A stretch of 64,000 bases of DNA, from the NCBI RefSeq assembly GCF_032062105.1, contig NW_026938995.1, positions 124,001 to 188,000 on the forward strand, read 5' to 3'. The position numbers were made by a program, and so were the translations under genes. The DNA comes from Saccostrea cucullata. Its lineage: Eukaryota. Below, piece by piece: positions 53,253-59,063 of the stretch (position 1 is its first letter; each line of letters starts with the position of its first letter). The notes under the pieces were generated by a model. The model was given only the letters and a program-made list of their open reading frames with translations, made no database searches and was not told the DNA's origin.

Positions 53253-53732
53253 AAAAAACATGGTTTTGTTAAAATGTTTCTGGCTAGTTAGACGAGTCGA
53301 AGTATTACACAGATAAGAAGAGGAAACTGACATCCCTAAGACTGTGTTTGAAAAATGGTTTAATATATTGAATGATTGTTCTTTTTTTTATTGTTTAACA
53401 CCGATTCGGCAATATTTCAGTCATGTTTCGGCGATGGTTTAGTTTGAAATTTGTGACAAAAATTCATGCTTAATTAATAATGATAACAAAACATGCGCAT
53501 ATTCAAGGAAAGTGAGTCGTATCAGTGATTGCCATAAAAACTTAAAGATCTTGGAGTTATCGTTCTTTTGAATATGTTGGTATATGAACCTCACATGTAT
53601 GAGAAATGTTGCAGCAAAATGAATATTTTTCATTTTTTTTTTCTTTTATTAAAAGCATATGCAATATACAACATAGTGGAAATAAATTGTAACATACATC
53701 ACAATTAATGCTTTTTATGTTCATATCAGAGT

Positions 53733-53968
53733 AGTTATATTACTTCTATAGAGAAGAAAAGAAAAAAAAATATATAAATATATCATACGTGTCATAGGTA
53801 TATAACAAGCATTTTGTTTTCTTTTATAACATTCACAAATTTATCTGTTCAGCAGTTATATTACTTCTATAGAGAAGAAAAGAAAAATATATAAATATAT
53901 CATACGTATCATAGGTATATAACAAGCATTTTGTTTTCTTTTATAACATTCACAAATTTATCTGTTCA
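53733..53968. repeat. Tandem ~118-bp duplication in the retrotransposon 3' UTR
   Basis: AGTTATATTACTTCTATAGAGAAGAAAAG...CACAAATTTATCTGTTCA at 53733-53851 and 53854-53968, nearly identical. Confidence 0.9.
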
Positions 53969-54167
53969 ATTTAATGCAATTATTCTAAGAGCGTATAAAC
54001 ATAGAATGTATAATATATAGGGAGAAATAAATAAATATTGAATCCAGGTAGCAAAGGGAGTCCTATTCAACACCAGCACTGTCCATAATGAGGACCCCTA
54101 GCTACCACACATGAAGACTGGTTTCTTCGTGTGTTGGATATGTCCTTGTCTACACCATAATTTTTTT

Positions 54168-57100
54168 TCATAAACAATTTGCTAAGTCATTGTACATGTT
54201 GTTTCTTATTTTACCAGTTTTTTTCACAATAGAATTTTGTAAAACAAGCCAATTTTTAACATAAGATTTCAAATTTTCTTCTGACATTCTTTCATTATTG
54301 AATCGACTCTTCATTTTATATTTATAGATTGTAAAACAAATAAATGAGATAAGATTATTCAAAATACATGTTTTCTCTGATAAATCACCAAAAAATCCCA
54401 ACATAATACGTTTCCATGAAACATTAAATTTTAAAAATATACTAATTTTCCTCCACAAATATGTTGTAATTGTACAAGAAAATAAAAGATGTTCACTATC
54501 TTCTGATACATTACATAACTCACACATTGGTGATACATCTTTATTCCATTTACTTACACTTATATTAGTATTTAACAGACAGTTAATCAGTTTGTAATTG
54601 AATTCTGCAATCTTTTTGTCATACATATTACAAATTTTTGAAATGTATATATTCTTCCATAATGATTTATCTTCTATGTTGAAATACTTATTCCACTTAC
54701 TCTCATATATTGAATTCTGAAATATGGATTGAACTAAGACCGAATAATAAAAATCACTTTTTAGAGATTTGATCGATTTAAAACAATTGTTTCTAAACAA
54801 AAACGAGTCATTATTATGAATGTTAATATAATTGGCATAGGAACAATCAAGCCTTGATTTAAAAGGTCTTAATGTCTTTTTTAGCATAATATATTCACAG
54901 TAAATATTGTTTTTACATTTTAATTTATCCCAAAAGTAATCTATTGCATGTATTTCACCGTTTTCATCAAAAAGATCTTTTACATAAAATATACCACTCT
55001 TGATCCATTGTTCAAAACATAATGTTTTAGAATCATATCGGAATAAATTATTGTGCCAGATAAATTGGGATAAAAATTCTTCCTTCAGAATTTTGTTGTT
55101 TTGTTTTATTTTTTTGCACTTATTAAACATTGAAAATACTTCCACATAAAACTGTGGGAAATTAGTCAATTCCCAGAATTTTTTATCATTCAAATTGCAA
55201 CTCGTTGTTTTAATGATATCATTTATAGATAAATTACTATTTTCCAATAAACTATTTAAAGTAAAGTGTGTGATTGTATCTTTATCCAATATTCTTCTTA
55301 CCCACGAAGCTTTCGCAGCAGAAAATTTACTTTCAATATCAACGATTCCTATTCCTCCTTGTTCAATTTTACCAATCAATGTATTTCGTTTAATCCTCTC
55401 TCTCTTTTTCCACAGAAAGTTAAAAATGATTTTTGAAGCTCTTTTAAAGAATTCTTTATCTGGATTAGGTAAAATAAACGCATTGTAAACAAGCTTTGAT
55501 ACCGCTAAAGTATTTATTATTGTACATTTTCCAAATATTGTTAAGTTGCGTTTTCGCCAAACACTTAAGATTTTTTCAAGTTTTTCAAGTTTACTTAGCC
55601 AATTTTTTTCATAACACACGTCTTTATTATGACCTAAATATATTCCAAGAGATTTAACACTTTCAGTTGCAATTTTTACACCGTATAGGTCGTTATTATT
55701 GCAATACTCATCAATTAAGGAACCAGTTAAGATACATTCAGTTTTAGATAAGTTAAGTTTCGGACCAGCAACTTTACTAAAATGGTGAATAATATTAAGA
55801 GTAGTTGCCAATGAATTGGTGTCTTTTAAGGCATTTGTGCAGTCATCAGCATGTTGGACTATCTTAATATTTTTTGAGGCATTCTCATTAAATGATAGGC
55901 CATGTATATTTTCATTATTTCTAATTTGGATAGCAAGTATTTCTAATACGAAAATAAAGAGAAGCGCAGATACCGGACATCCTTGACGTATTCCCCTTTT
56001 CATTGAGCAAGATTTTGAAATCCAGCCGTTATTTTTAATTTTGAACGTAGGATTATTATAAAGAGTTTTGATCATATCAATGAAGTCTTCTCCAAAGTTG
56101 AATTTTCGTAATGTTTTAAAAATGAAGTTATACTCAACAGAGTCAAATGCTTTTTCGAAATCTAAGAATAACAATATGCCATCAAGATCGTGATTCATAC
56201 AGTACTCGTATATATCAAGTATCAGTCTCGCATTTTCTCCAATGTATCTTCCTTTGATATATGCACTTTGTTCTTTTCCTATGATTTTTTTAGCAACAGG
56301 CTGTAATCGTAAAGCTAAAATCTGTGCAAAAATTTTATAGTCCACATTTGTGAGACTTATAGGTCTGTAATTTTTTAATTTATCTTTTTCACCTTTTTTG
56401 TAAATAAGGGAGAGTATTGCGTCTCGTTGTGAGAATGGTAGAATTCCGATCTCAATACTTTTGATTAAACATGAGAAATATATATCTTTAATATCATTCC
56501 AAAATATTTTATAAAATTCTGCTGGAAGTCCATCAGAACCAGGAGATTTGTTATTTTTCATATGATGAATGGCTTCCTTACACTCAGACATGGTCGGTAA
56601 TTTATCGCAGTTATTTCTATCATTTTCACTAACTTTAGGACATTCAATATTTTCAAGGTATTTTTCAATATCTTGATCACAGATTTTTCTACTCTCATAT
56701 AATGCATTATAAAAATCGACTAAAGCTTTCATAATATCTCCATTTTCCATAAAGACAATATCGTCGTCATTAGTAACTTTATTAATCGTATTGTCGCCCT
56801 GTTGCTTTTTTTCTAAATTTAAGAAATATGCAGTACTTTTTTCGCCCTTTTCCATCCAGATAGCTCTTGATCTTATGTAAGCCCCTTTACATTTTTGTGC
56901 ATATAATTCATCAATTTCATTTTCAAGCTGTCTTTTATATCTCATATTTATATGCGAGTAGGGTTTATTTTCCAATATTTTAATTTGATTCTCAATGAAA
57001 TCAATTCGCTTTCTTTTGGATACAGCATTTTCTTTAGAATAGGCTATTGTGAAATTTTTAATTGATTTTTTTCAAGCATTCCCATTTAGGAGCCGGATCA

Positions 57101-57948
57101 GGATCATGAATTCTAGATATTTCTTGTTTAATAAAGTTTCTCATTTCATTGCAAAATTTTTCTTTGTTGAGAAGTGACGTATTCATTTTCCAATAACCAC
57201 TCCCTCTAATATTTTCTGCGGTACAAAAATCAAAGTATAAACCTAAATGGTCACTAAATCTTGTCCCGTCATAATTAGGAGCTTTTCTTAATAAAATTTG
57301 ATTAAATCTATAGCAGAAACTTTCTGACGTAAATACGTAGTCAATTCTAGATTTTGGATTATTTTCCCCATCACACCACGTGTACCCCTGTTCGTTATTT
57401 TTATCACTAAAGGACCAACAGTCGATCAAATTTAATGATTTCACAAAGTTTCTAAGAGCCTTTACATTTCTATTATTTTCGATGATATCTATCTGACAGT
57501 TAAAATCTCCACAAACTATTAAGTTATCCAAACTTTTAGCATATTTATTGACCCATTTCAACATTTTATTTAAAAATATAATTTTGTCATTTTCTTTATT
57601 TGGCACATAAAAATTGGCCAAACTTAAAATTTGTTCAGATAATTTAACATTTACCAATAATTTTCTACCGTCAATCGAAGAATACTTATCTAGTATTTCG
57701 ATATCAAGATTTTCTTTAAACAAAATAGATACACCTCTACTGTATACCGAGTCAGAAAAACTATGAATTTTATACCCAAACCAACGTGAATTATAAATTA
57801 CTTCATTTGCTTCAATAAAATGTGTTTCTTGCAAGAAGATTATATCAAATTTTGCATCTTTAATCCATTCAAACAACAAAATTCTTTTACTATAAGTATT
57901 TAAACCACGCGCGTTTATAGAATAGAAAGTTAGTAAGTTTGTACTCAT
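54168..57948 (-). CDS. Retrotransposon ORF2 polyprotein (AP endonuclease, reverse transcriptase, C-terminal CCHC); one +1 frameshift in an A7 run
   Basis: 57058-57948: INARGL, FLQETH, GDFN, SRIDY, SDH, GYWKMN (APE). 54168-56975: KSPGSDG, NYRPISL, DFEKAFDSV, GIRQGCPVS, QHADD, LGIYLG, CELC..EDSEHLLFSC. Removing one base from the T7 run at 57066-57072 gives a single 1259-aa ORF. Confidence 0.92.
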
Positions 57949-57972
57949 TTACATAAAGCTATATTTGCTAAA

Positions 57973-58764
57973 TTACCCCTGGTCCTTTACATTTCTCTTC
58001 CTGTTTGAGTTTCTCCTGGCCTCCCGAATGAAGCCGTCCAGATTTGTCTGATTTTCGTCTGGGTTCTTATTTTTCGGAAGTGAGGTACTTCTGAGTCTTT
58101 TTGTAAGTTTTGATGTTATCCTACCCAGAATCTCTCCTAGCCGGTTTTCGCCCGGCCATTTTTCCGGATTCGTATGGAGGGTAGCATCTGGATATAGTCC
58201 GGTTCCCCAGAATATATCGTTAGTTGCTTCGGCGAATAGTGTTTTAGCATCTGAATTTTCCAGTTTCTCGCGAAGTTCCGGTACCTGAGTAGCTTTAGCA
58301 TGTATGATCTCCTCCATTACCGTTTCTTTTTGATCTTGCCACTTTTCTGGGATGTTCACTTTATCTCCTATTCTCTTAGCCTCAAGAGCTGTGGGAGCAA
58401 CGCGGATGTTTTCGGTAGCGTTGAAGTCTCCAGATCGAATAGCTTTCGTAAGCTGGTAGGCGTGCTCAGCTGATTTGTGGGTTTCCCCGAAGACCTTAAC
58501 ATCACAGGGAAAGAAATTGGATAGGGGGTTTTCTTTTCCTTGAAACACCACTAATCCATCAGCAGGTTCGCTATAGTGCTCACAATCTTTTGATCCCGGC
58601 TTATGTCCAGTTTGTTTGCATACACGACATGCGATTTCTTTTGTACAGTCTTTGGCCCTGTGTCCTGTGTCCCAACAATTGTAGCATTGCACCTGAGATT
58701 CACCCTTTTCCTGTCCATAATGGTACAATCTACACTTGATATCTGCACATTTTACATTTTTCAT
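57973..58764 (-). CDS. Retrotransposon ORF1 C-terminal part: two CCHC zinc knuckles plus a NADAR (YbiA/DUF1768) domain
   Basis: YHYGQ followed by CYNCWDTGHRAKDC and CRVCKQTGHKPGSKDC (Tx1-type knuckles). Residues ~71-220 carry the NADAR motifs LSNFF, SAEHAYQLTKA, AKRIG, W..M..I..AK.TQ.PELREKL, AEATNDIFWGTG and GENRLGEIL. Confidence 0.88.
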   Translation of the reverse strand: MKNVKCADIKCRLYHYGQEKGESQVQCYNCWDTGHRAKDCTKEIACRVCKQTGHKPGSKDCEHYSEPADGLVVFQGKENPLSNFFPCDVKVFGETHKSAEHAYQLTKAIRSGDFNATENIRVAPTALEAKRIGDKVNIPEKWQDQKETVMEEIIHAKATQVPELREKLENSDAKTLFAEATNDIFWGTGLYPDATLHTNPEKWPGENRLGEILGRITSKLTKRLRSTSLPKNKNPDENQTNLDGFIREARRNSNRKRNVKDQG

Positions 58765-59063
58765 TTAATAAACTGAAAATATTCATCTTTGAATCATATT
58801 TTTGAAAAAAATGATAAAAAGAATAAAATTCTTGATGAAAGTAATATTGATGTAGTATTTTACTTTTTAATGTTCATCTGAATGAACACGAGTTTCGCTA
58901 TCCTTTTTGCCCCTCCTGCAATACAGATTTTGTAAATCTTTTTCATGAAACCACTGGTCCTTATCTTATCATTCTATACACTTATTGTCTATTATTCACA
59001 CACAGATTGCACTTCTGGCAGGGTTAAAGGACTCCCTGCCAAAGATTTCTCTAAATCAAAGCT

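What the first reader, a model, noticed from the sequence alone, without database searches (positions are those of the whole stretch)
57973..58764. Tx1/L1 retrotransposon whose ORF1 carries a NADAR (ADP-ribose-guanine glycohydrolase fold) domain: possible transposon counter-defence system
Seen: the ORF lies inside the TSD-bounded element and ends 24 nt before the ORF2 ATG. It reads Y.GQ, two CCHC knuckles, then a complete NADAR domain (~58554-58105), retaining the Glu of SAEH, the Lys of TKA, the Asp of NDIFWG and the G.N.LG motif. Established: NADAR proteins are N-glycosidases. YbiA acts on riboflavin intermediates, and the NADAR antitoxin of DarT1-NADAR removes ADP-ribose from guanine in DNA. 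NADAR also occurs in phages and some large RNA and DNA viruses. Usual LINE ORF1 modules are RRM, knuckles, coiled coil, PHD or esterase, and I do not know NADAR as a standard one. Pierisin-like guanine ADP-ribosyltransferases (CARP-1) are known from clams. Inference: the element packages an eraser of ADP-ribosyl marks into its RNP to protect its RNA or single-stranded cDNA during target-primed reverse transcription. That would imply a host ADP-ribosylation-based restriction of transposons in bivalves.
Basis: partly seen in the sequence, partly recalled or inferred. Interest (0 to 1): 0.92.

Follow-up and report, generated by a model that had tools for sequence, protein, structure and literature searches.

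The report
Oyster LINE ORF1 with NADAR domain
This is a dead, front-truncated copy of an oyster jumping gene (an L1/Tx1-type LINE) whose RNA-binding protein really does end in a conserved, selected NADAR enzyme domain of the kind that strips ADP-ribose from DNA and RNA bases. The fusion was already noted briefly for Pacific-oyster Tx1 elements in a 2025 paper, and what it does for the element is still unknown.

Summary
The 263-aa ORF exists and carries a genuine NADAR domain: Pfam PF08719 E=3e-26, and the fold matches YbiA and Phytophthora NADAR. It follows two CCHC knuckles and ends 24 nt before the ORF2 ATG.

The window copy is a remnant. Homology to the family starts at 58756, and the ATG lies in the target-site duplication (AAATGAAAAAT), so it is fortuitous. 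About 165 N-terminal residues of ORF1 are missing. A 1-bp insertion at 57072 frameshifts ORF2.

Full-length copies (~5.9 kb, poly(A), variable 14-16 bp TSDs) encode a 428-aa ORF1p built as RRM-RRM-2xCCHC-NADAR-basic tail, plus a 1259-aa EN-RT ORF2.

The genome (probably Saccostrea cucullata) holds at least 146 such ORF1 matches, and 55 intact ones fall into at least 19 lineages. The catalytic Glu, Lys and Trp are invariant. NADAR dN/dS is 0.05-0.28, like the RRMs. So NADAR is a fixed, selected module, of the YbiA type rather than the DarT1-antitoxin type.

Prior art exists: PMC12477816 (2025) notes NADAR in ORF1 of C. gigas Tx1 families. This scan also flagged the same thing on other pieces of this genome (s1-710874 and others).

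The counter-defence idea is plausible by analogy with phage NADARs and nidovirus replicases, but it is untested. No host DNA/RNA ADP-ribosyltransferase was found, and those searches were inconclusive.

The parts
58756..58766 (-). 5' copy of the target-site duplication AAATGAAAAAT. It contains the ATG (58764-58762) of the 263-aa ORF.
   Evidence: Sequence read. Family homology starts at 58756.
53636..58755 (-). 5'-truncated copy (~5.1 kb of ~5.9 kb) of a young L1-superfamily (Tx1-like) LINE family. It is 98.9% identical to a full-length copy.
   Evidence: blastn and global alignment to full-length genomic copies.
57973..58764 (-). Open frame of 263 aa. It is the C-terminal 260 residues of ORF1p plus three flank-derived codons (M-K-N).
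   Evidence: Other copies have a 497-codon open frame and a 428-aa ORF1.
58582..58686 (-). Two CCHC zinc knuckles (aa 27-40 and 46-61 of the 263-aa ORF).
   Evidence: Pfam zf-CCHC E=3e-6 for the first knuckle. The Cys and His columns are invariant in 41 homologues.
58084..58554 (-). NADAR domain, YbiA subfamily (aa 71-227). Catalytic Glu (SAEH), Lys (TKA), last-strand Glu (AEAT), Asp and Trp (NDIFWG).
   Evidence: Pfam PF08719 E=3.4e-26. PDB sequence hits YbiA 7e-9 and 8BAU 6e-6. Foldseek TM 0.75 and 0.72. Residue conservation.
57976..58083 (-). Basic, low-confidence C-terminal tail of ORF1p (Lys/Arg-rich).
   Evidence: Translation. pLDDT below 50 for much of this region in the model.
57058..57948 (-). 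ORF2 N-terminal part: APE-type endonuclease. The frame ends prematurely after a 1-bp insertion at 57072.
   Evidence: Pfam Exo_endo_phos E=5e-20. Indel mapped.
54168..56975 (-). ORF2 remainder in another frame: reverse transcriptase plus C-terminal zf-RVT.
   Evidence: Pfam RVT_1 E=7.5e-33 and zf-RVT E=2e-6. An uninterrupted 1259-aa ORF2 exists in another copy.
53636..54167 (-). 3' UTR with a ~117-bp tandem duplication (about 53733-53968), an AATAAA signal and a short poly(A) tail (about 53636-53645).
53625..53635 (-). 3' copy of the target-site duplication AAATGAAAAAT. Its leading A's merge with the poly(A) tail.

Best explanation
Shown:
- The finding is the C-terminal 260 residues of ORF1p of a 5'-truncated, frameshifted, recently inserted copy of an oyster L1-superfamily (Tx1-like) LINE.
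- In intact copies ORF1p is a 428-aa Type-I-like LINE chaperone: two RRMs, two CCHC knuckles, then an in-frame YbiA-subfamily NADAR domain and a basic tail. An EN-RT-zf ORF2 follows after 24 nt.
- The NADAR module is a fixed, monophyletic part of this LINE lineage and is under purifying selection. It occurs in at least 19 lineages in this genome, in other pteriomorph bivalves, and on outside contigs.

Inferred:
- The domain is a catalytically active N-glycosidase (about 0.7).
- The RRM, knuckle and basic modules hold it on the element's own RNA or nascent cDNA.
- Its most likely substrate is ADP-ribose attached to nucleobases (guanine N2, possibly cytosine). That is the only macromolecular activity shown for NADARs, including YbiA-type ones. 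Probability about 0.4.
- Removing such adducts would keep the template readable by the RT. Whether the adducts come from a dedicated host restriction enzyme (the counter-defence reading, about 0.25) or from other sources is unknown.

The confidence given below applies to the shown anatomy and evolution, not to the mechanism.
For: Domain identity:
- Pfam NADAR E=3.4e-26 (window) and 1.4e-25 (full ORF1).
- AF2 model with pLDDT 87.7. Foldseek top hits are YbiA 2B3W (TM 0.75) and P. nicotianae NADAR 8BAU (TM 0.72, rmsd 3.5), followed by tandem-RRM proteins for the N-terminus.
- The alignment to 8BAU equates SAEH-Glu with E43, TKA-Lys with K50, AEAT-Glu with E125, and the Asp and Trp of NDIFWG with D130 and W133 (residue roles from PMC11543638).

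Fixed module, not a one-off capture:
- At least 146 ORF1 matches in the genome at 36-100% identity, most without stops.
- 55 intact ORFs fall into 19 clusters at 80% identity, with Glu, Lys and Trp in 55/55.

Selection:
- NADAR dN/dS is 0.05-0.28 in independent subfamily pairs with dS 0.03-0.7. This is similar to the RRM and CCHC regions.

LINE identity:
- Full-length copies have TSDs, poly(A) tails and a 1259-aa ORF2.
- ORF2 is closest to human L1 ORF2p, 3.6e-89.
- The same ORF1-ORF2 layout occurs on four outside contigs.
- Named homologues occur in Pinctada, Crassostrea/Magallana, Saccostrea and Ostrea.

Enzymology and precedents (literature):
- NADARs of several subfamilies, including YbiA-type ones, hydrolyse guanine-ADPr on DNA and RNA (PMC11543638, PMC11125620, PMC11833690).
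- T4-like phages use orphan NADARs against DarTG1 (PMC11825919 abstract).
- NADAR folds occur in roniviral and nido-like replicases of invertebrates and in giant viruses.
Against: - No biochemical data exist for any animal or transposon NADAR.
- One ADPr-contacting residue of the Phytophthora enzyme (R79) is not conserved here: the aligned position is K/N/D.
- No guanine-targeting ART was found in this genome. The control genomes were also silent, so the blanks are uninformative.
- DNA-ADP-ribosylating activity in bivalves is reported for clams (PMC11209040), not for oysters.
- YbiA-type enzymes also cleave small-molecule N-glycosides (riboflavin intermediates), so the physiological substrate may not be a nucleic acid.
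- The only published comment on these elements suggests RNA processing instead (PMC12477816).
Confidence: 0.9

Rival explanations
1. Counter-defence proper. A host (or symbiont or pathogen) ADP-ribosyltransferase marks LINE RNA or single-stranded cDNA as a restriction mechanism, and the ORF1p-borne NADAR erases the marks inside the RNP.
For: - It parallels phage orphan NADARs that neutralise DarTG1 (PMC11825919).
- NADAR folds occur in replicases of invertebrate RNA viruses and in giant viruses.
- An unrelated retrotransposon acquired NADAR independently: Ectocarpus Gypsy (PMC12477816).
- The subfamily-defining active-site residue is diversified among families of one genome, all under purifying selection: Glu in 41, His in 13, Asp in 1 of 55, with Asp348 changed to Asn in 9. 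This fits shifting substrate or enemy specificity.
- Guanine-N2 DNA ADP-ribosylating proteins exist in bivalves: CARP-1 and five other clams (PMC11209040).
Against: - No cognate ART was identified in this genome (inconclusive).
- No evidence exists that any eukaryote restricts transposons by base ADP-ribosylation.
- CARP-1 activity is reported from heterodont clams, whereas these LINEs are documented in pteriomorph oysters.
- The whole argument is by analogy.
Confidence: 0.25
2. RNA-processing or template-maintenance role without a host enemy. The NADAR acts on the element's RNA, for example by removing spontaneous or metabolic N-glycosidic adducts or a 5'-end-related NAD/ADPr-derived group. 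This is the suggestion made for the C. gigas and Ectocarpus elements.
For: - The published suggestion (PMC12477816).
- NADAR is fused to mRNA capping enzyme (guanylyltransferase plus N7-methyltransferase) in ~1130-aa proteins that were the closest non-TE hits to a profile of distant NADAR-ORF1 proteins (A2).
- A C. elegans multi-NADAR protein, SNA-3, is linked to trans-splicing (PMC11125620).
Against: [quoted passage not shown]
- No defined RNA-processing reaction is known for NADAR.
- Most LINEs manage without such a domain.
Confidence: 0.2
3. Small-molecule N-glycosidase, or a protein- or PARP-directed role. The domain either hydrolyses free ADP-ribose/NAD-derived or riboflavin-intermediate-like metabolites near the RNP, or it counteracts protein ADP-ribosylation triggered by the TPRT nick.
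For: - E. coli YbiA and plant homologues cleave riboflavin-pathway intermediates (cited in PMC11543638). The domain here is of the YbiA type.
- A PARG-ARH-NADAR triple fusion (P0285) shows that NADAR travels with general ADP-ribose erasers.
Against: - No protein de-ADP-ribosylase activity is reported for NADAR in the papers I read.
- A metabolic enzyme gives no obvious benefit to a LINE.
- Tethering to RRMs and knuckles argues for a nucleic-acid substrate.
Confidence: 0.1
4. The domain is a non-catalytic structural or nucleic-acid-binding module (a pseudoenzyme) kept for RNP assembly.
For: - One ADPr-binding Arg of the reference structure is not conserved.
- Asp348 is Asn in 9/55 families.
Against: - The catalytic Glu and Lys and the Trp are invariant in 55/55 genomic and 40-41/41 database homologues down to ~31% identity.
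- The last-strand residue is always one of the three catalytic alternatives known in the superfamily (E, H or D).
Confidence: 0.05

Closest known systems
Tx1 LINE families of Crassostrea (Magallana) gigas in Repbase, whose ORF1 proteins carry YbiA-family NADAR domains (noted in PMC12477816, Genome Biol 2025)
   Same: The same kind of host (Ostreidae), the same element type and the same ORF1-NADAR fusion. C. gigas proteins share 48% identity over 98% of the full ORF1p (P0022).
   Different: - This is a different genus and different families. The best database identity to the full ORF1p is 63%.
- The paper gives one paragraph without copy numbers, selection analysis, structure or active-site analysis.
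- I could not compare directly with the Repbase sequences.
Type I LINE ORF1p (RRM plus CCHC knuckle; plant L1 and Tx1-like elements) and its vertebrate derivative ZCCHC3
   Same: Tandem RRM-like domains followed by CCHC knuckles. Foldseek gives tandem-RRM hits, and the Atlas feature search lists ZCCHC3 RNA-binding-domain clusters at 0.75-0.77 (a lead only).
   Different: It has an extra ~160-aa enzymatic NADAR domain and a basic tail after the knuckles.
Orphan YbiA-subfamily NADARs (E. coli YbiA, PDB 2B3W; Phytophthora nicotianae NADAR, PDB 8BAU)
   Same: The same fold (TM 0.72-0.75). It has the same catalytic Glu and Lys and the YbiA-type Glu in the last strand. These enzymes hydrolyse guanine-ADPr in vitro (PMC11543638, PMC11125620).
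   Different: They are free-standing proteins. Here the domain is embedded in a retrotransposon RNA chaperone. The R79-equivalent position is not conserved.
DarT1-NADAR (DarTG1) antitoxins and phage anti-DarTG1 NADARs (gp30.3 type)
   Same: The same superfamily. A mobile genetic element carrying a NADAR as an eraser is the functional precedent. 13/55 oyster families have His at the phage-type position.
   Different: - This family has Glu, not the Asp of DarT1-associated NADARs.
- There is no DarT neighbour and no DarT hit in the genome.
- The host is eukaryotic.
Ectocarpus Gypsy LTR retrotransposons with NADAR at the N-terminus of Pol (PMC12477816)
   Same: A retrotransposon that has fixed a YbiA-family NADAR domain.
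   Different: It is a different element class, a different position (Pol rather than the gag-like ORF1) and apparently a separate, bacterial-like acquisition.
Esterase-type LINE ORF1 proteins (SGNH/GDSL; CR1/L2-like)
   Same: They are another case of an enzyme domain in ORF1. One outside contig (L080, P0089) has GDSL esterase plus NADAR in a single ORF1 upstream of an EN ORF.
   Different: The enzyme and presumed substrate (lipid) differ. The window family has no esterase.

Membership tests
NADAR superfamily (Pfam PF08719) | Profile match above the curated gathering score | tested here: met
   92.9 bits against a cut-off of 35.1, E=3.4e-26, covering model positions 9-162 of 163.
NADAR superfamily (Pfam PF08719) | YbiA-like fold (helical core flanked by small sheets) | tested here: met
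   AF2 pLDDT is about 95 across the domain. Foldseek gives 2B3W at TM 0.75 and 8BAU at TM 0.72, rmsd 3.5.
NADAR superfamily (Pfam PF08719) | Conserved catalytic Glu and Lys (E43/K50 of P. nicotianae; E88/K95 of E. coli C7) | tested here: met
   SAEH-Glu and TKA-Lys align to E43 and K50. They are present in 55/55 genomic and 40/41 database homologues.
NADAR superfamily (Pfam PF08719) | ADP-ribosyl-base (N-glycosidic) hydrolase activity | not testable with these tools
   This needs a biochemical assay.
YbiA subfamily of NADAR | Glutamate in the last strand (E125 of P. nicotianae) | tested here: met
   The AEAT-Glu aligns to E125. It is Glu in the window family and in 41/55 sampled ORFs, with His in 13 and Asp in 1.
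DarT1-associated (BC4488) NADAR antitoxin | Aspartate at the distinguishing last-strand position | tested here: not met
   The window family has Glu.
DarT1-associated (BC4488) NADAR antitoxin | Encoded next to a DarT toxin gene | tested here: not met
   The neighbours are LINE ORF2 and flanking DNA. PF14487 finds nothing in the genome, although its control was also silent.
L1-superfamily LINE (L1/Tx1 group) | ORF2 with N-terminal APE-type endonuclease, RT and a C-terminal zinc-binding domain | tested here: met
   Exo_endo_phos, RVT_1 and zf-RVT in a 1259-aa ORF2. The best solved relative is human L1 ORF2p at 3.6e-89, against R2 at 1e-14.
L1-superfamily LINE (L1/Tx1 group) | TPRT hallmarks: poly(A) tail, variable-length TSDs, frequent 5' truncation | tested here: met
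   The window copy and four full-length copies have poly(A) tails and 11-16 bp TSDs. The window copy is 5'-truncated.
Tx1 clade in the strict sense | RT phylogeny groups the element with reference Tx1 elements | not tested
   No Repbase or reference RT set was available. The label rests on the Repbase classification of the C. gigas relatives as quoted in PMC12477816.
Tx1 clade in the strict sense | Sequence-specific insertion (typical of many Tx1 members) | tested here: not met
   The five TSDs examined are all different: AAATGAAAAAT, AAATGAAAATGGTGTC, ACTCTTCAAGAGTA, GAGTGGAAATTTTC and GAATGTAAACAGAAA.
Type I LINE ORF1p (RRM plus CCHC) | RRM fold(s) followed by CCHC knuckle(s) | tested here: met
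   Model residues 13-180 match tandem-RRM structures (U2AF65, HuR, hnRNP A1) at Foldseek E of 4e-5 to 1e-3. The knuckle Cys and His are invariant.

The most novel reading that the evidence does not exclude
Oyster and other invertebrate LINEs carry an active base-de-ADP-ribosylase in their RNP because their RNA or cDNA is attacked by a still-unidentified ADP-ribosyltransferase. On this reading, nucleic-acid ADP-ribosylation is a eukaryotic restriction system against retroelements and RNA viruses. LINE ORF1-NADAR, the roniviral and nido-like replicase NADARs and the giant-virus NADARs would be parallel counter-measures. The Glu/His/Asn active-site variants among families of one genome would reflect an arms race.
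Probability: 0.22. Interest if true: 0.9.

Novelty: new member of a known kind. Interest (0 to 1): 0.55.

Why it matters
An enzyme that erases ADP-ribose from nucleobases, built into the RNA chaperone of a LINE and kept under selection in dozens of lineages, implies one of two things. Either the element's nucleic acids meet such adducts in vivo, or NADAR has an unknown RNA-related activity. Either answer would be new biology for animal NADARs, which currently have no assigned function (PMC11125620). If the adducts are laid by a host enzyme, this would reveal an ADP-ribosylation-based defence against retroelements in invertebrates. It would mirror bacterial DarTG against phage NADARs, and vertebrate PARPs against viral macrodomains. 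The system is experimentally tractable: recombinant domain assays, and catalytic mutants in a mobility reporter. The fusion itself, however, is already in Repbase and has been mentioned in print.

Tried and rejected
1. Host-enzyme search. The genome search on the window's genome with Pfam DarT (PF14487), ADPrib_exo_Tox (PF03496) and Enterotoxin_a (PF01375) found nothing. The 14 control genomes were also silent, so the blanks carry no weight. No session-held sequence of CARP-1 or pierisin was available to use as a query.
3. NADAR-less sister lineages. A genome search with the RRM-RRM-CCHC part alone was saturated by 150 scored hits. The top-scoring hits, and all with long open frames, were the NADAR-bearing loci. 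Absence of NADAR-less relatives therefore cannot be claimed.
4. Taxonomic range beyond pteriomorph bivalves. Distant ORF1-type NADAR proteins come from unnamed ENA, Logan and NCBI assemblies. The listing of cluster members returned no names. Atlas clusters are labelled Mollusca only.
5. First tree analysis. The attempt to find a clade of at least 90% TE sequences failed, because fragmentary proteins could not be labelled. I replaced it with an MRCA test.
6. The CARP-1 paper (PMC1564245) is not held. I therefore could not check whether oysters were among the shellfish tested.
7. One-off capture, neutral evolution and chance ORF are rejected.
8. DarT1-antitoxin membership is rejected: Glu rather than Asp, and no DarT.
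Full report
**1. What is at the coordinates**

The ORF listing and translate confirm a 263-codon ORF on the minus strand, 57973..58764. Its features are:
- LYHYGQ, which matches the family-wide motif H-x-G-Q.
- Two knuckles, CYNCWDTGHRAKDC and CRVCKQTGHKPGSKDC.
- A ~155-residue domain that Pfam scores as NADAR (PF08719): 92.9 bits against a cut-off of 35.1, E=3.4e-26, almost full model length.
- By sequence alone it finds E. coli YbiA (2B3W, 7e-9) and the Phytophthora nicotianae NADAR-ADPr complex (8BAU, 6e-6) in the PDB.

The stop is at 57973-57975. The next ATG, at 57948, opens an APE-endonuclease ORF, so the 24-nt spacer is correct. Downstream there are RT and zf-RVT domains. The sequence-level observation therefore holds and is far beyond chance.

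**2. The window copy is a truncated, dead insertion**

- Similarity of the window element to other genomic copies begins abruptly at 58756 and runs to a short poly(A) tail at ~53636.
- The same 11-mer, AAATGAAAAAT, lies immediately outside both ends (58766-58756 and 53635-53625). This is the target-site duplication.
- The ATG of the 263-aa ORF (58764-58762) lies inside that duplication. The first three codons (M-K-N) come from the target site, and the ORF start is fortuitous.
- Other copies of the same family (96-99% identical) have a 497-codon open frame at this position.
- The window copy lacks ~767 bp of 5' sequence, namely the 5' UTR and the first ~165 residues of ORF1p.
- A global alignment to a full-length copy gives 98.9% identity over 5.1 kb. 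It shows a single 1-bp insertion at window 57072, which frameshifts ORF2 between the endonuclease and the RT.
- The 3' UTR carries a ~117-bp tandem duplication.

**3. The full-length element**

- Six full-length loci were fetched. The element is ~5.9 kb.
- It starts with GAAAGTCACGTGACGG, ends in AATAAA plus poly(A), and is flanked by 14-16 bp TSDs.
- The TSDs differ between copies, so there is no site specificity.
- ORF1 (taking the MTSDVPNIM... start) is 428 aa, at L035:1955-3238.
- ORF2 is 1259 aa with Exo_endo_phos, RVT_1 and zf-RVT.
- ORF1 is open in all six copies. ORF2 is uninterrupted in one of the six.
- ORF2's best solved relative is human L1 ORF2p (3.6e-89 over ~880 residues), far ahead of R2 (1e-14).
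- I therefore file the element in the L1 superfamily. The label 'Tx1' follows the Repbase classification of the C. gigas relatives quoted in the literature and was not tested here.

**4. Architecture of ORF1p**

An AlphaFold2 model built on 41 homologues has mean pLDDT 87.7. Foldseek against the PDB gives:
- YbiA (TM 0.75 on the target) and 8BAU (TM 0.72, rmsd 3.5) for residues ~236-392.
- A long list of tandem-RRM proteins (U2AF65, HuR, hnRNP A1, IMP3) for residues ~13-180.

ORF1p is thus RRM-RRM-CCHC-CCHC-NADAR-basic tail. This is a Type-I-like LINE chaperone with an enzyme added at its C-terminal end. A language-model look-up returns two mollusc NADAR clusters. With lower scores it returns CCHC and ZCCHC3-type RNA-binding clusters.

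**5. Which NADAR**

Schuller et al. (PMC11543638) identify the following in the Phytophthora enzyme:
- E43 and E125 on the distal ribose.
- K50, R79, W89, R93, W133 and D130 in ADPr binding.

They and Cihlova et al. (PMC11125620) define the subfamilies by the last-strand residue:
- Glu in the YbiA family.
- Asp in the DarT1-associated BC4488 family.
- His in the phage gp30.3 type.

The HMMER alignment to 8BAU (chain index = paper numbering + 2) gives these equivalences:
- SAEH-Glu = E43.
- TKA-Lys = K50.
- PEKW-Trp = W89.
- AEAT-Glu = E125.
- NDIFW Asp and Trp = D130 and W133.
- The R79 position is Asp here and K/N/D across the family.

The window family is therefore YbiA-type, not the DarT1-antitoxin type. 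[quoted passage not shown] NADARs are inactive on phosphate-end ADPr (PMC11125620, PMC11833690).

**6. Fixed module under selection**

- A six-frame search of the window's own 1.17-Gb assembly with the 263-aa ORF gives at least 146 matches at 36-100% identity. This is a lower bound (637 candidates, 145 scored). Most have no internal stops and lie in open frames of 390-520 codons.
- From 55 intact ORF1s I obtained 19 clusters at 80% amino-acid identity.
- The catalytic Glu, Lys and W351 are present in 55/55.
- Nei-Gojobori dN/dS for the NADAR segment is 0.05-0.28 in independent subfamily pairs with dS from 0.03 to 0.7. Examples: 0.037/0.398, 0.034/0.714, 0.028/0.448. These values are indistinguishable from the RRM and knuckle segments. 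The C-terminal tail is often less constrained: 0.75-1.2 in several subfamilies, though no non-synonymous change is seen in others.
- Caveat: only intact ORFs were analysed. This biases omega downward, but not by an order of magnitude.
- The last-strand residue is Glu in 41, His in 13 and Asp in 1. D348 is Asn in 9. Each state defines whole families that are themselves under purifying selection.

**7. Distribution**

- Word-indexed searches find the full architecture in Pinctada imbricata, Crassostrea/Magallana gigas, Saccostrea cucullata and Ostrea edulis, at 42-50% identity.
- A 97%-identical S. cucullata fragment (P0092) suggests the window comes from S. cucullata or a very close relative. 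So does the identity of a contig length: 447,821 bp for C13194 and for the contig of P0024.
- An exhaustive HMMER scan with the domain alone finds 8826 proteins at E<=1e-3. Many of the top 150 are 50%-cluster representatives of 400-620 aa with NADAR at ~200-380. A sample of 26 such proteins shares the RRM-CCHC-NADAR layout.
- In total, 162 of the 298 session proteins hit a profile of the N-terminal RRM region.
- On four outside contigs the NADAR ORF sits directly upstream of an EN/RT ORF (L077, L081, L082). In L080 the ORF1 has a GDSL esterase followed by NADAR.
- In a FastTree of NADAR domains, all 150 domains from RRM-bearing proteins fall in one clade (support 0.82). That clade excludes the capping-enzyme fusions, a PARG-ARH-NADAR fusion, the fungal proteins and most multi-NADAR proteins. 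The esterase-NADAR ORF1 is nested inside it.
- This tree is exploratory, because the sample was chosen by similarity to the query.

**8. Prior knowledge**

- A full-text search found one directly relevant statement. It is in 'Characterization of the transposable element landscape shaping the Ectocarpus genome' (Genome Biol 2025, PMC12477816).
- That paper reports a YbiA-family NADAR at the N-terminus of Pol in one Ectocarpus Gypsy lineage.
[quoted passage not shown] It suggests a role in processing RNA intermediates.
- In the listed results of my searches, no other paper on bivalve or mollusc LINEs mentions NADAR; the bivalve TE survey PMC10294476 has zero occurrences of 'NADAR domain'.
- The scan itself flagged the same fusion on three other pieces of this genome. 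One follow-up reached the same verdict (s1-710874).
The functional hypothesis is not published, as far as the held library shows.

**9. Mechanism**

Shown:
- An apparently intact NADAR active site is covalently tethered to RNA and ssDNA-binding modules in the protein that coats LINE RNA.
- It is maintained by selection.

Inferred from established NADAR enzymology:
- The domain cleaves an N-glycosidic ADP-ribosyl-base bond on the element's RNA or nascent cDNA. That would remove a block to reverse transcription or second-strand synthesis.

Support by analogy for a conflict role:
- Phage orphan NADARs defeat DarTG1 (PMC11825919).
- Structural NADAR matches occur in replicase polyproteins of shrimp roniviruses and nido-like invertebrate viruses, and in many giant viruses and phages.
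- Ectocarpus Gypsy acquired NADAR independently.
- The subfamily-defining residue varies among co-resident families.

Against or missing:
- No host ART was found. The blanks have silent controls.
- DNA-ADP-ribosylating proteins in bivalves are documented for clams, not oysters (PMC11209040).
- There is no biochemistry for any animal NADAR.
- NADAR-capping-enzyme fusions keep an RNA-processing reading alive.

My estimates are:

| Claim | Probability |
|---|---|
| Catalytically active | ~0.7 |
| Substrate is a nucleic-acid base adduct | ~0.4 |
| Adduct laid by a dedicated host restriction ART | ~0.2-0.25 |

**10. Not done**

Copies were only compared and described.
- RT-based clade placement needs a reference set that is not available here.

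Noticed in passing
Own-genome loci L037, L039-L041, L048-L050, L053, L054, L073-L076 against L038, L046, L047, L064-L068, L071: Co-resident NADAR-ORF1 families differ at the residue that defines NADAR subfamilies. The states are Glu...Asp (29/55), His...Asp (13/55, the phage gp30.3-type state) and Glu...Asn (9/55). Each state is fixed in whole families with NADAR dN/dS around 0.06-0.1.
   Followed up: partly
L080:729-2453 (P0089) with L080:2568-3716: A metagenome-assembly contig carries a LINE whose ORF1 combines a GDSL/SGNH esterase (aa 193-304) with a NADAR domain (aa 371-501), upstream of an endonuclease ORF. Its NADAR nests inside the RRM-type LINE NADAR clade.
   Followed up: partly
P0273-P0290 (database proteins, ~1120-1160 aa): The mRNA capping enzyme (guanylyltransferase plus cap N7-methyltransferase) carries a C-terminal NADAR domain, 35-43% identical to the NADAR domain of a distant LINE ORF1 protein (P0244). 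These look like large-DNA-virus proteins. They link NADAR to mRNA 5'-end enzymes.
   Followed up: no
P0285 (861 aa): A single protein fuses all three known ADP-ribose eraser folds: microbial PARG, ARH (ADP_ribosyl_GH) and NADAR.
   Followed up: no
BFVD hits (Gill-associated virus and yellow head virus replicase 1ab, Wenling nido-like virus 1, Ingleside virus RdRp): The ORF1p model's NADAR part matches segments of replicase polyproteins of invertebrate RNA viruses. This suggests NADAR plays in invertebrate viruses the part that macrodomains play in vertebrate ones.
   Followed up: no
window 53733-53968 (-): The 3' UTR of the LINE holds a ~117-bp tandem duplication. It is also present, with variable copy structure, in other family members.
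   Followed up: no
G000:C15369:5814-7295 and G000:C17122:9153-10634: In a related family (55-69% identity), the NADAR part lies on the opposite strand just upstream of the RRM part. This is an inverted rearrangement present at two loci, and it resembles the inverted copy described in the earlier finding s1-710874.
   Followed up: no
L032:2-1696 and L032:7400-9001: One full-length copy is inserted between two long open frames (565 and 534 codons) that look like parts of another, larger element. This would be a nested insertion.
   Followed up: no
P0112 (4240 aa, 7 NADAR stretches), P0114, P0127: Very long proteins with multiple tandem NADAR domains are among the best non-LINE matches. They may be relatives of the nematode multi-NADAR protein SNA-3/F44E2.8.
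   Followed up: no
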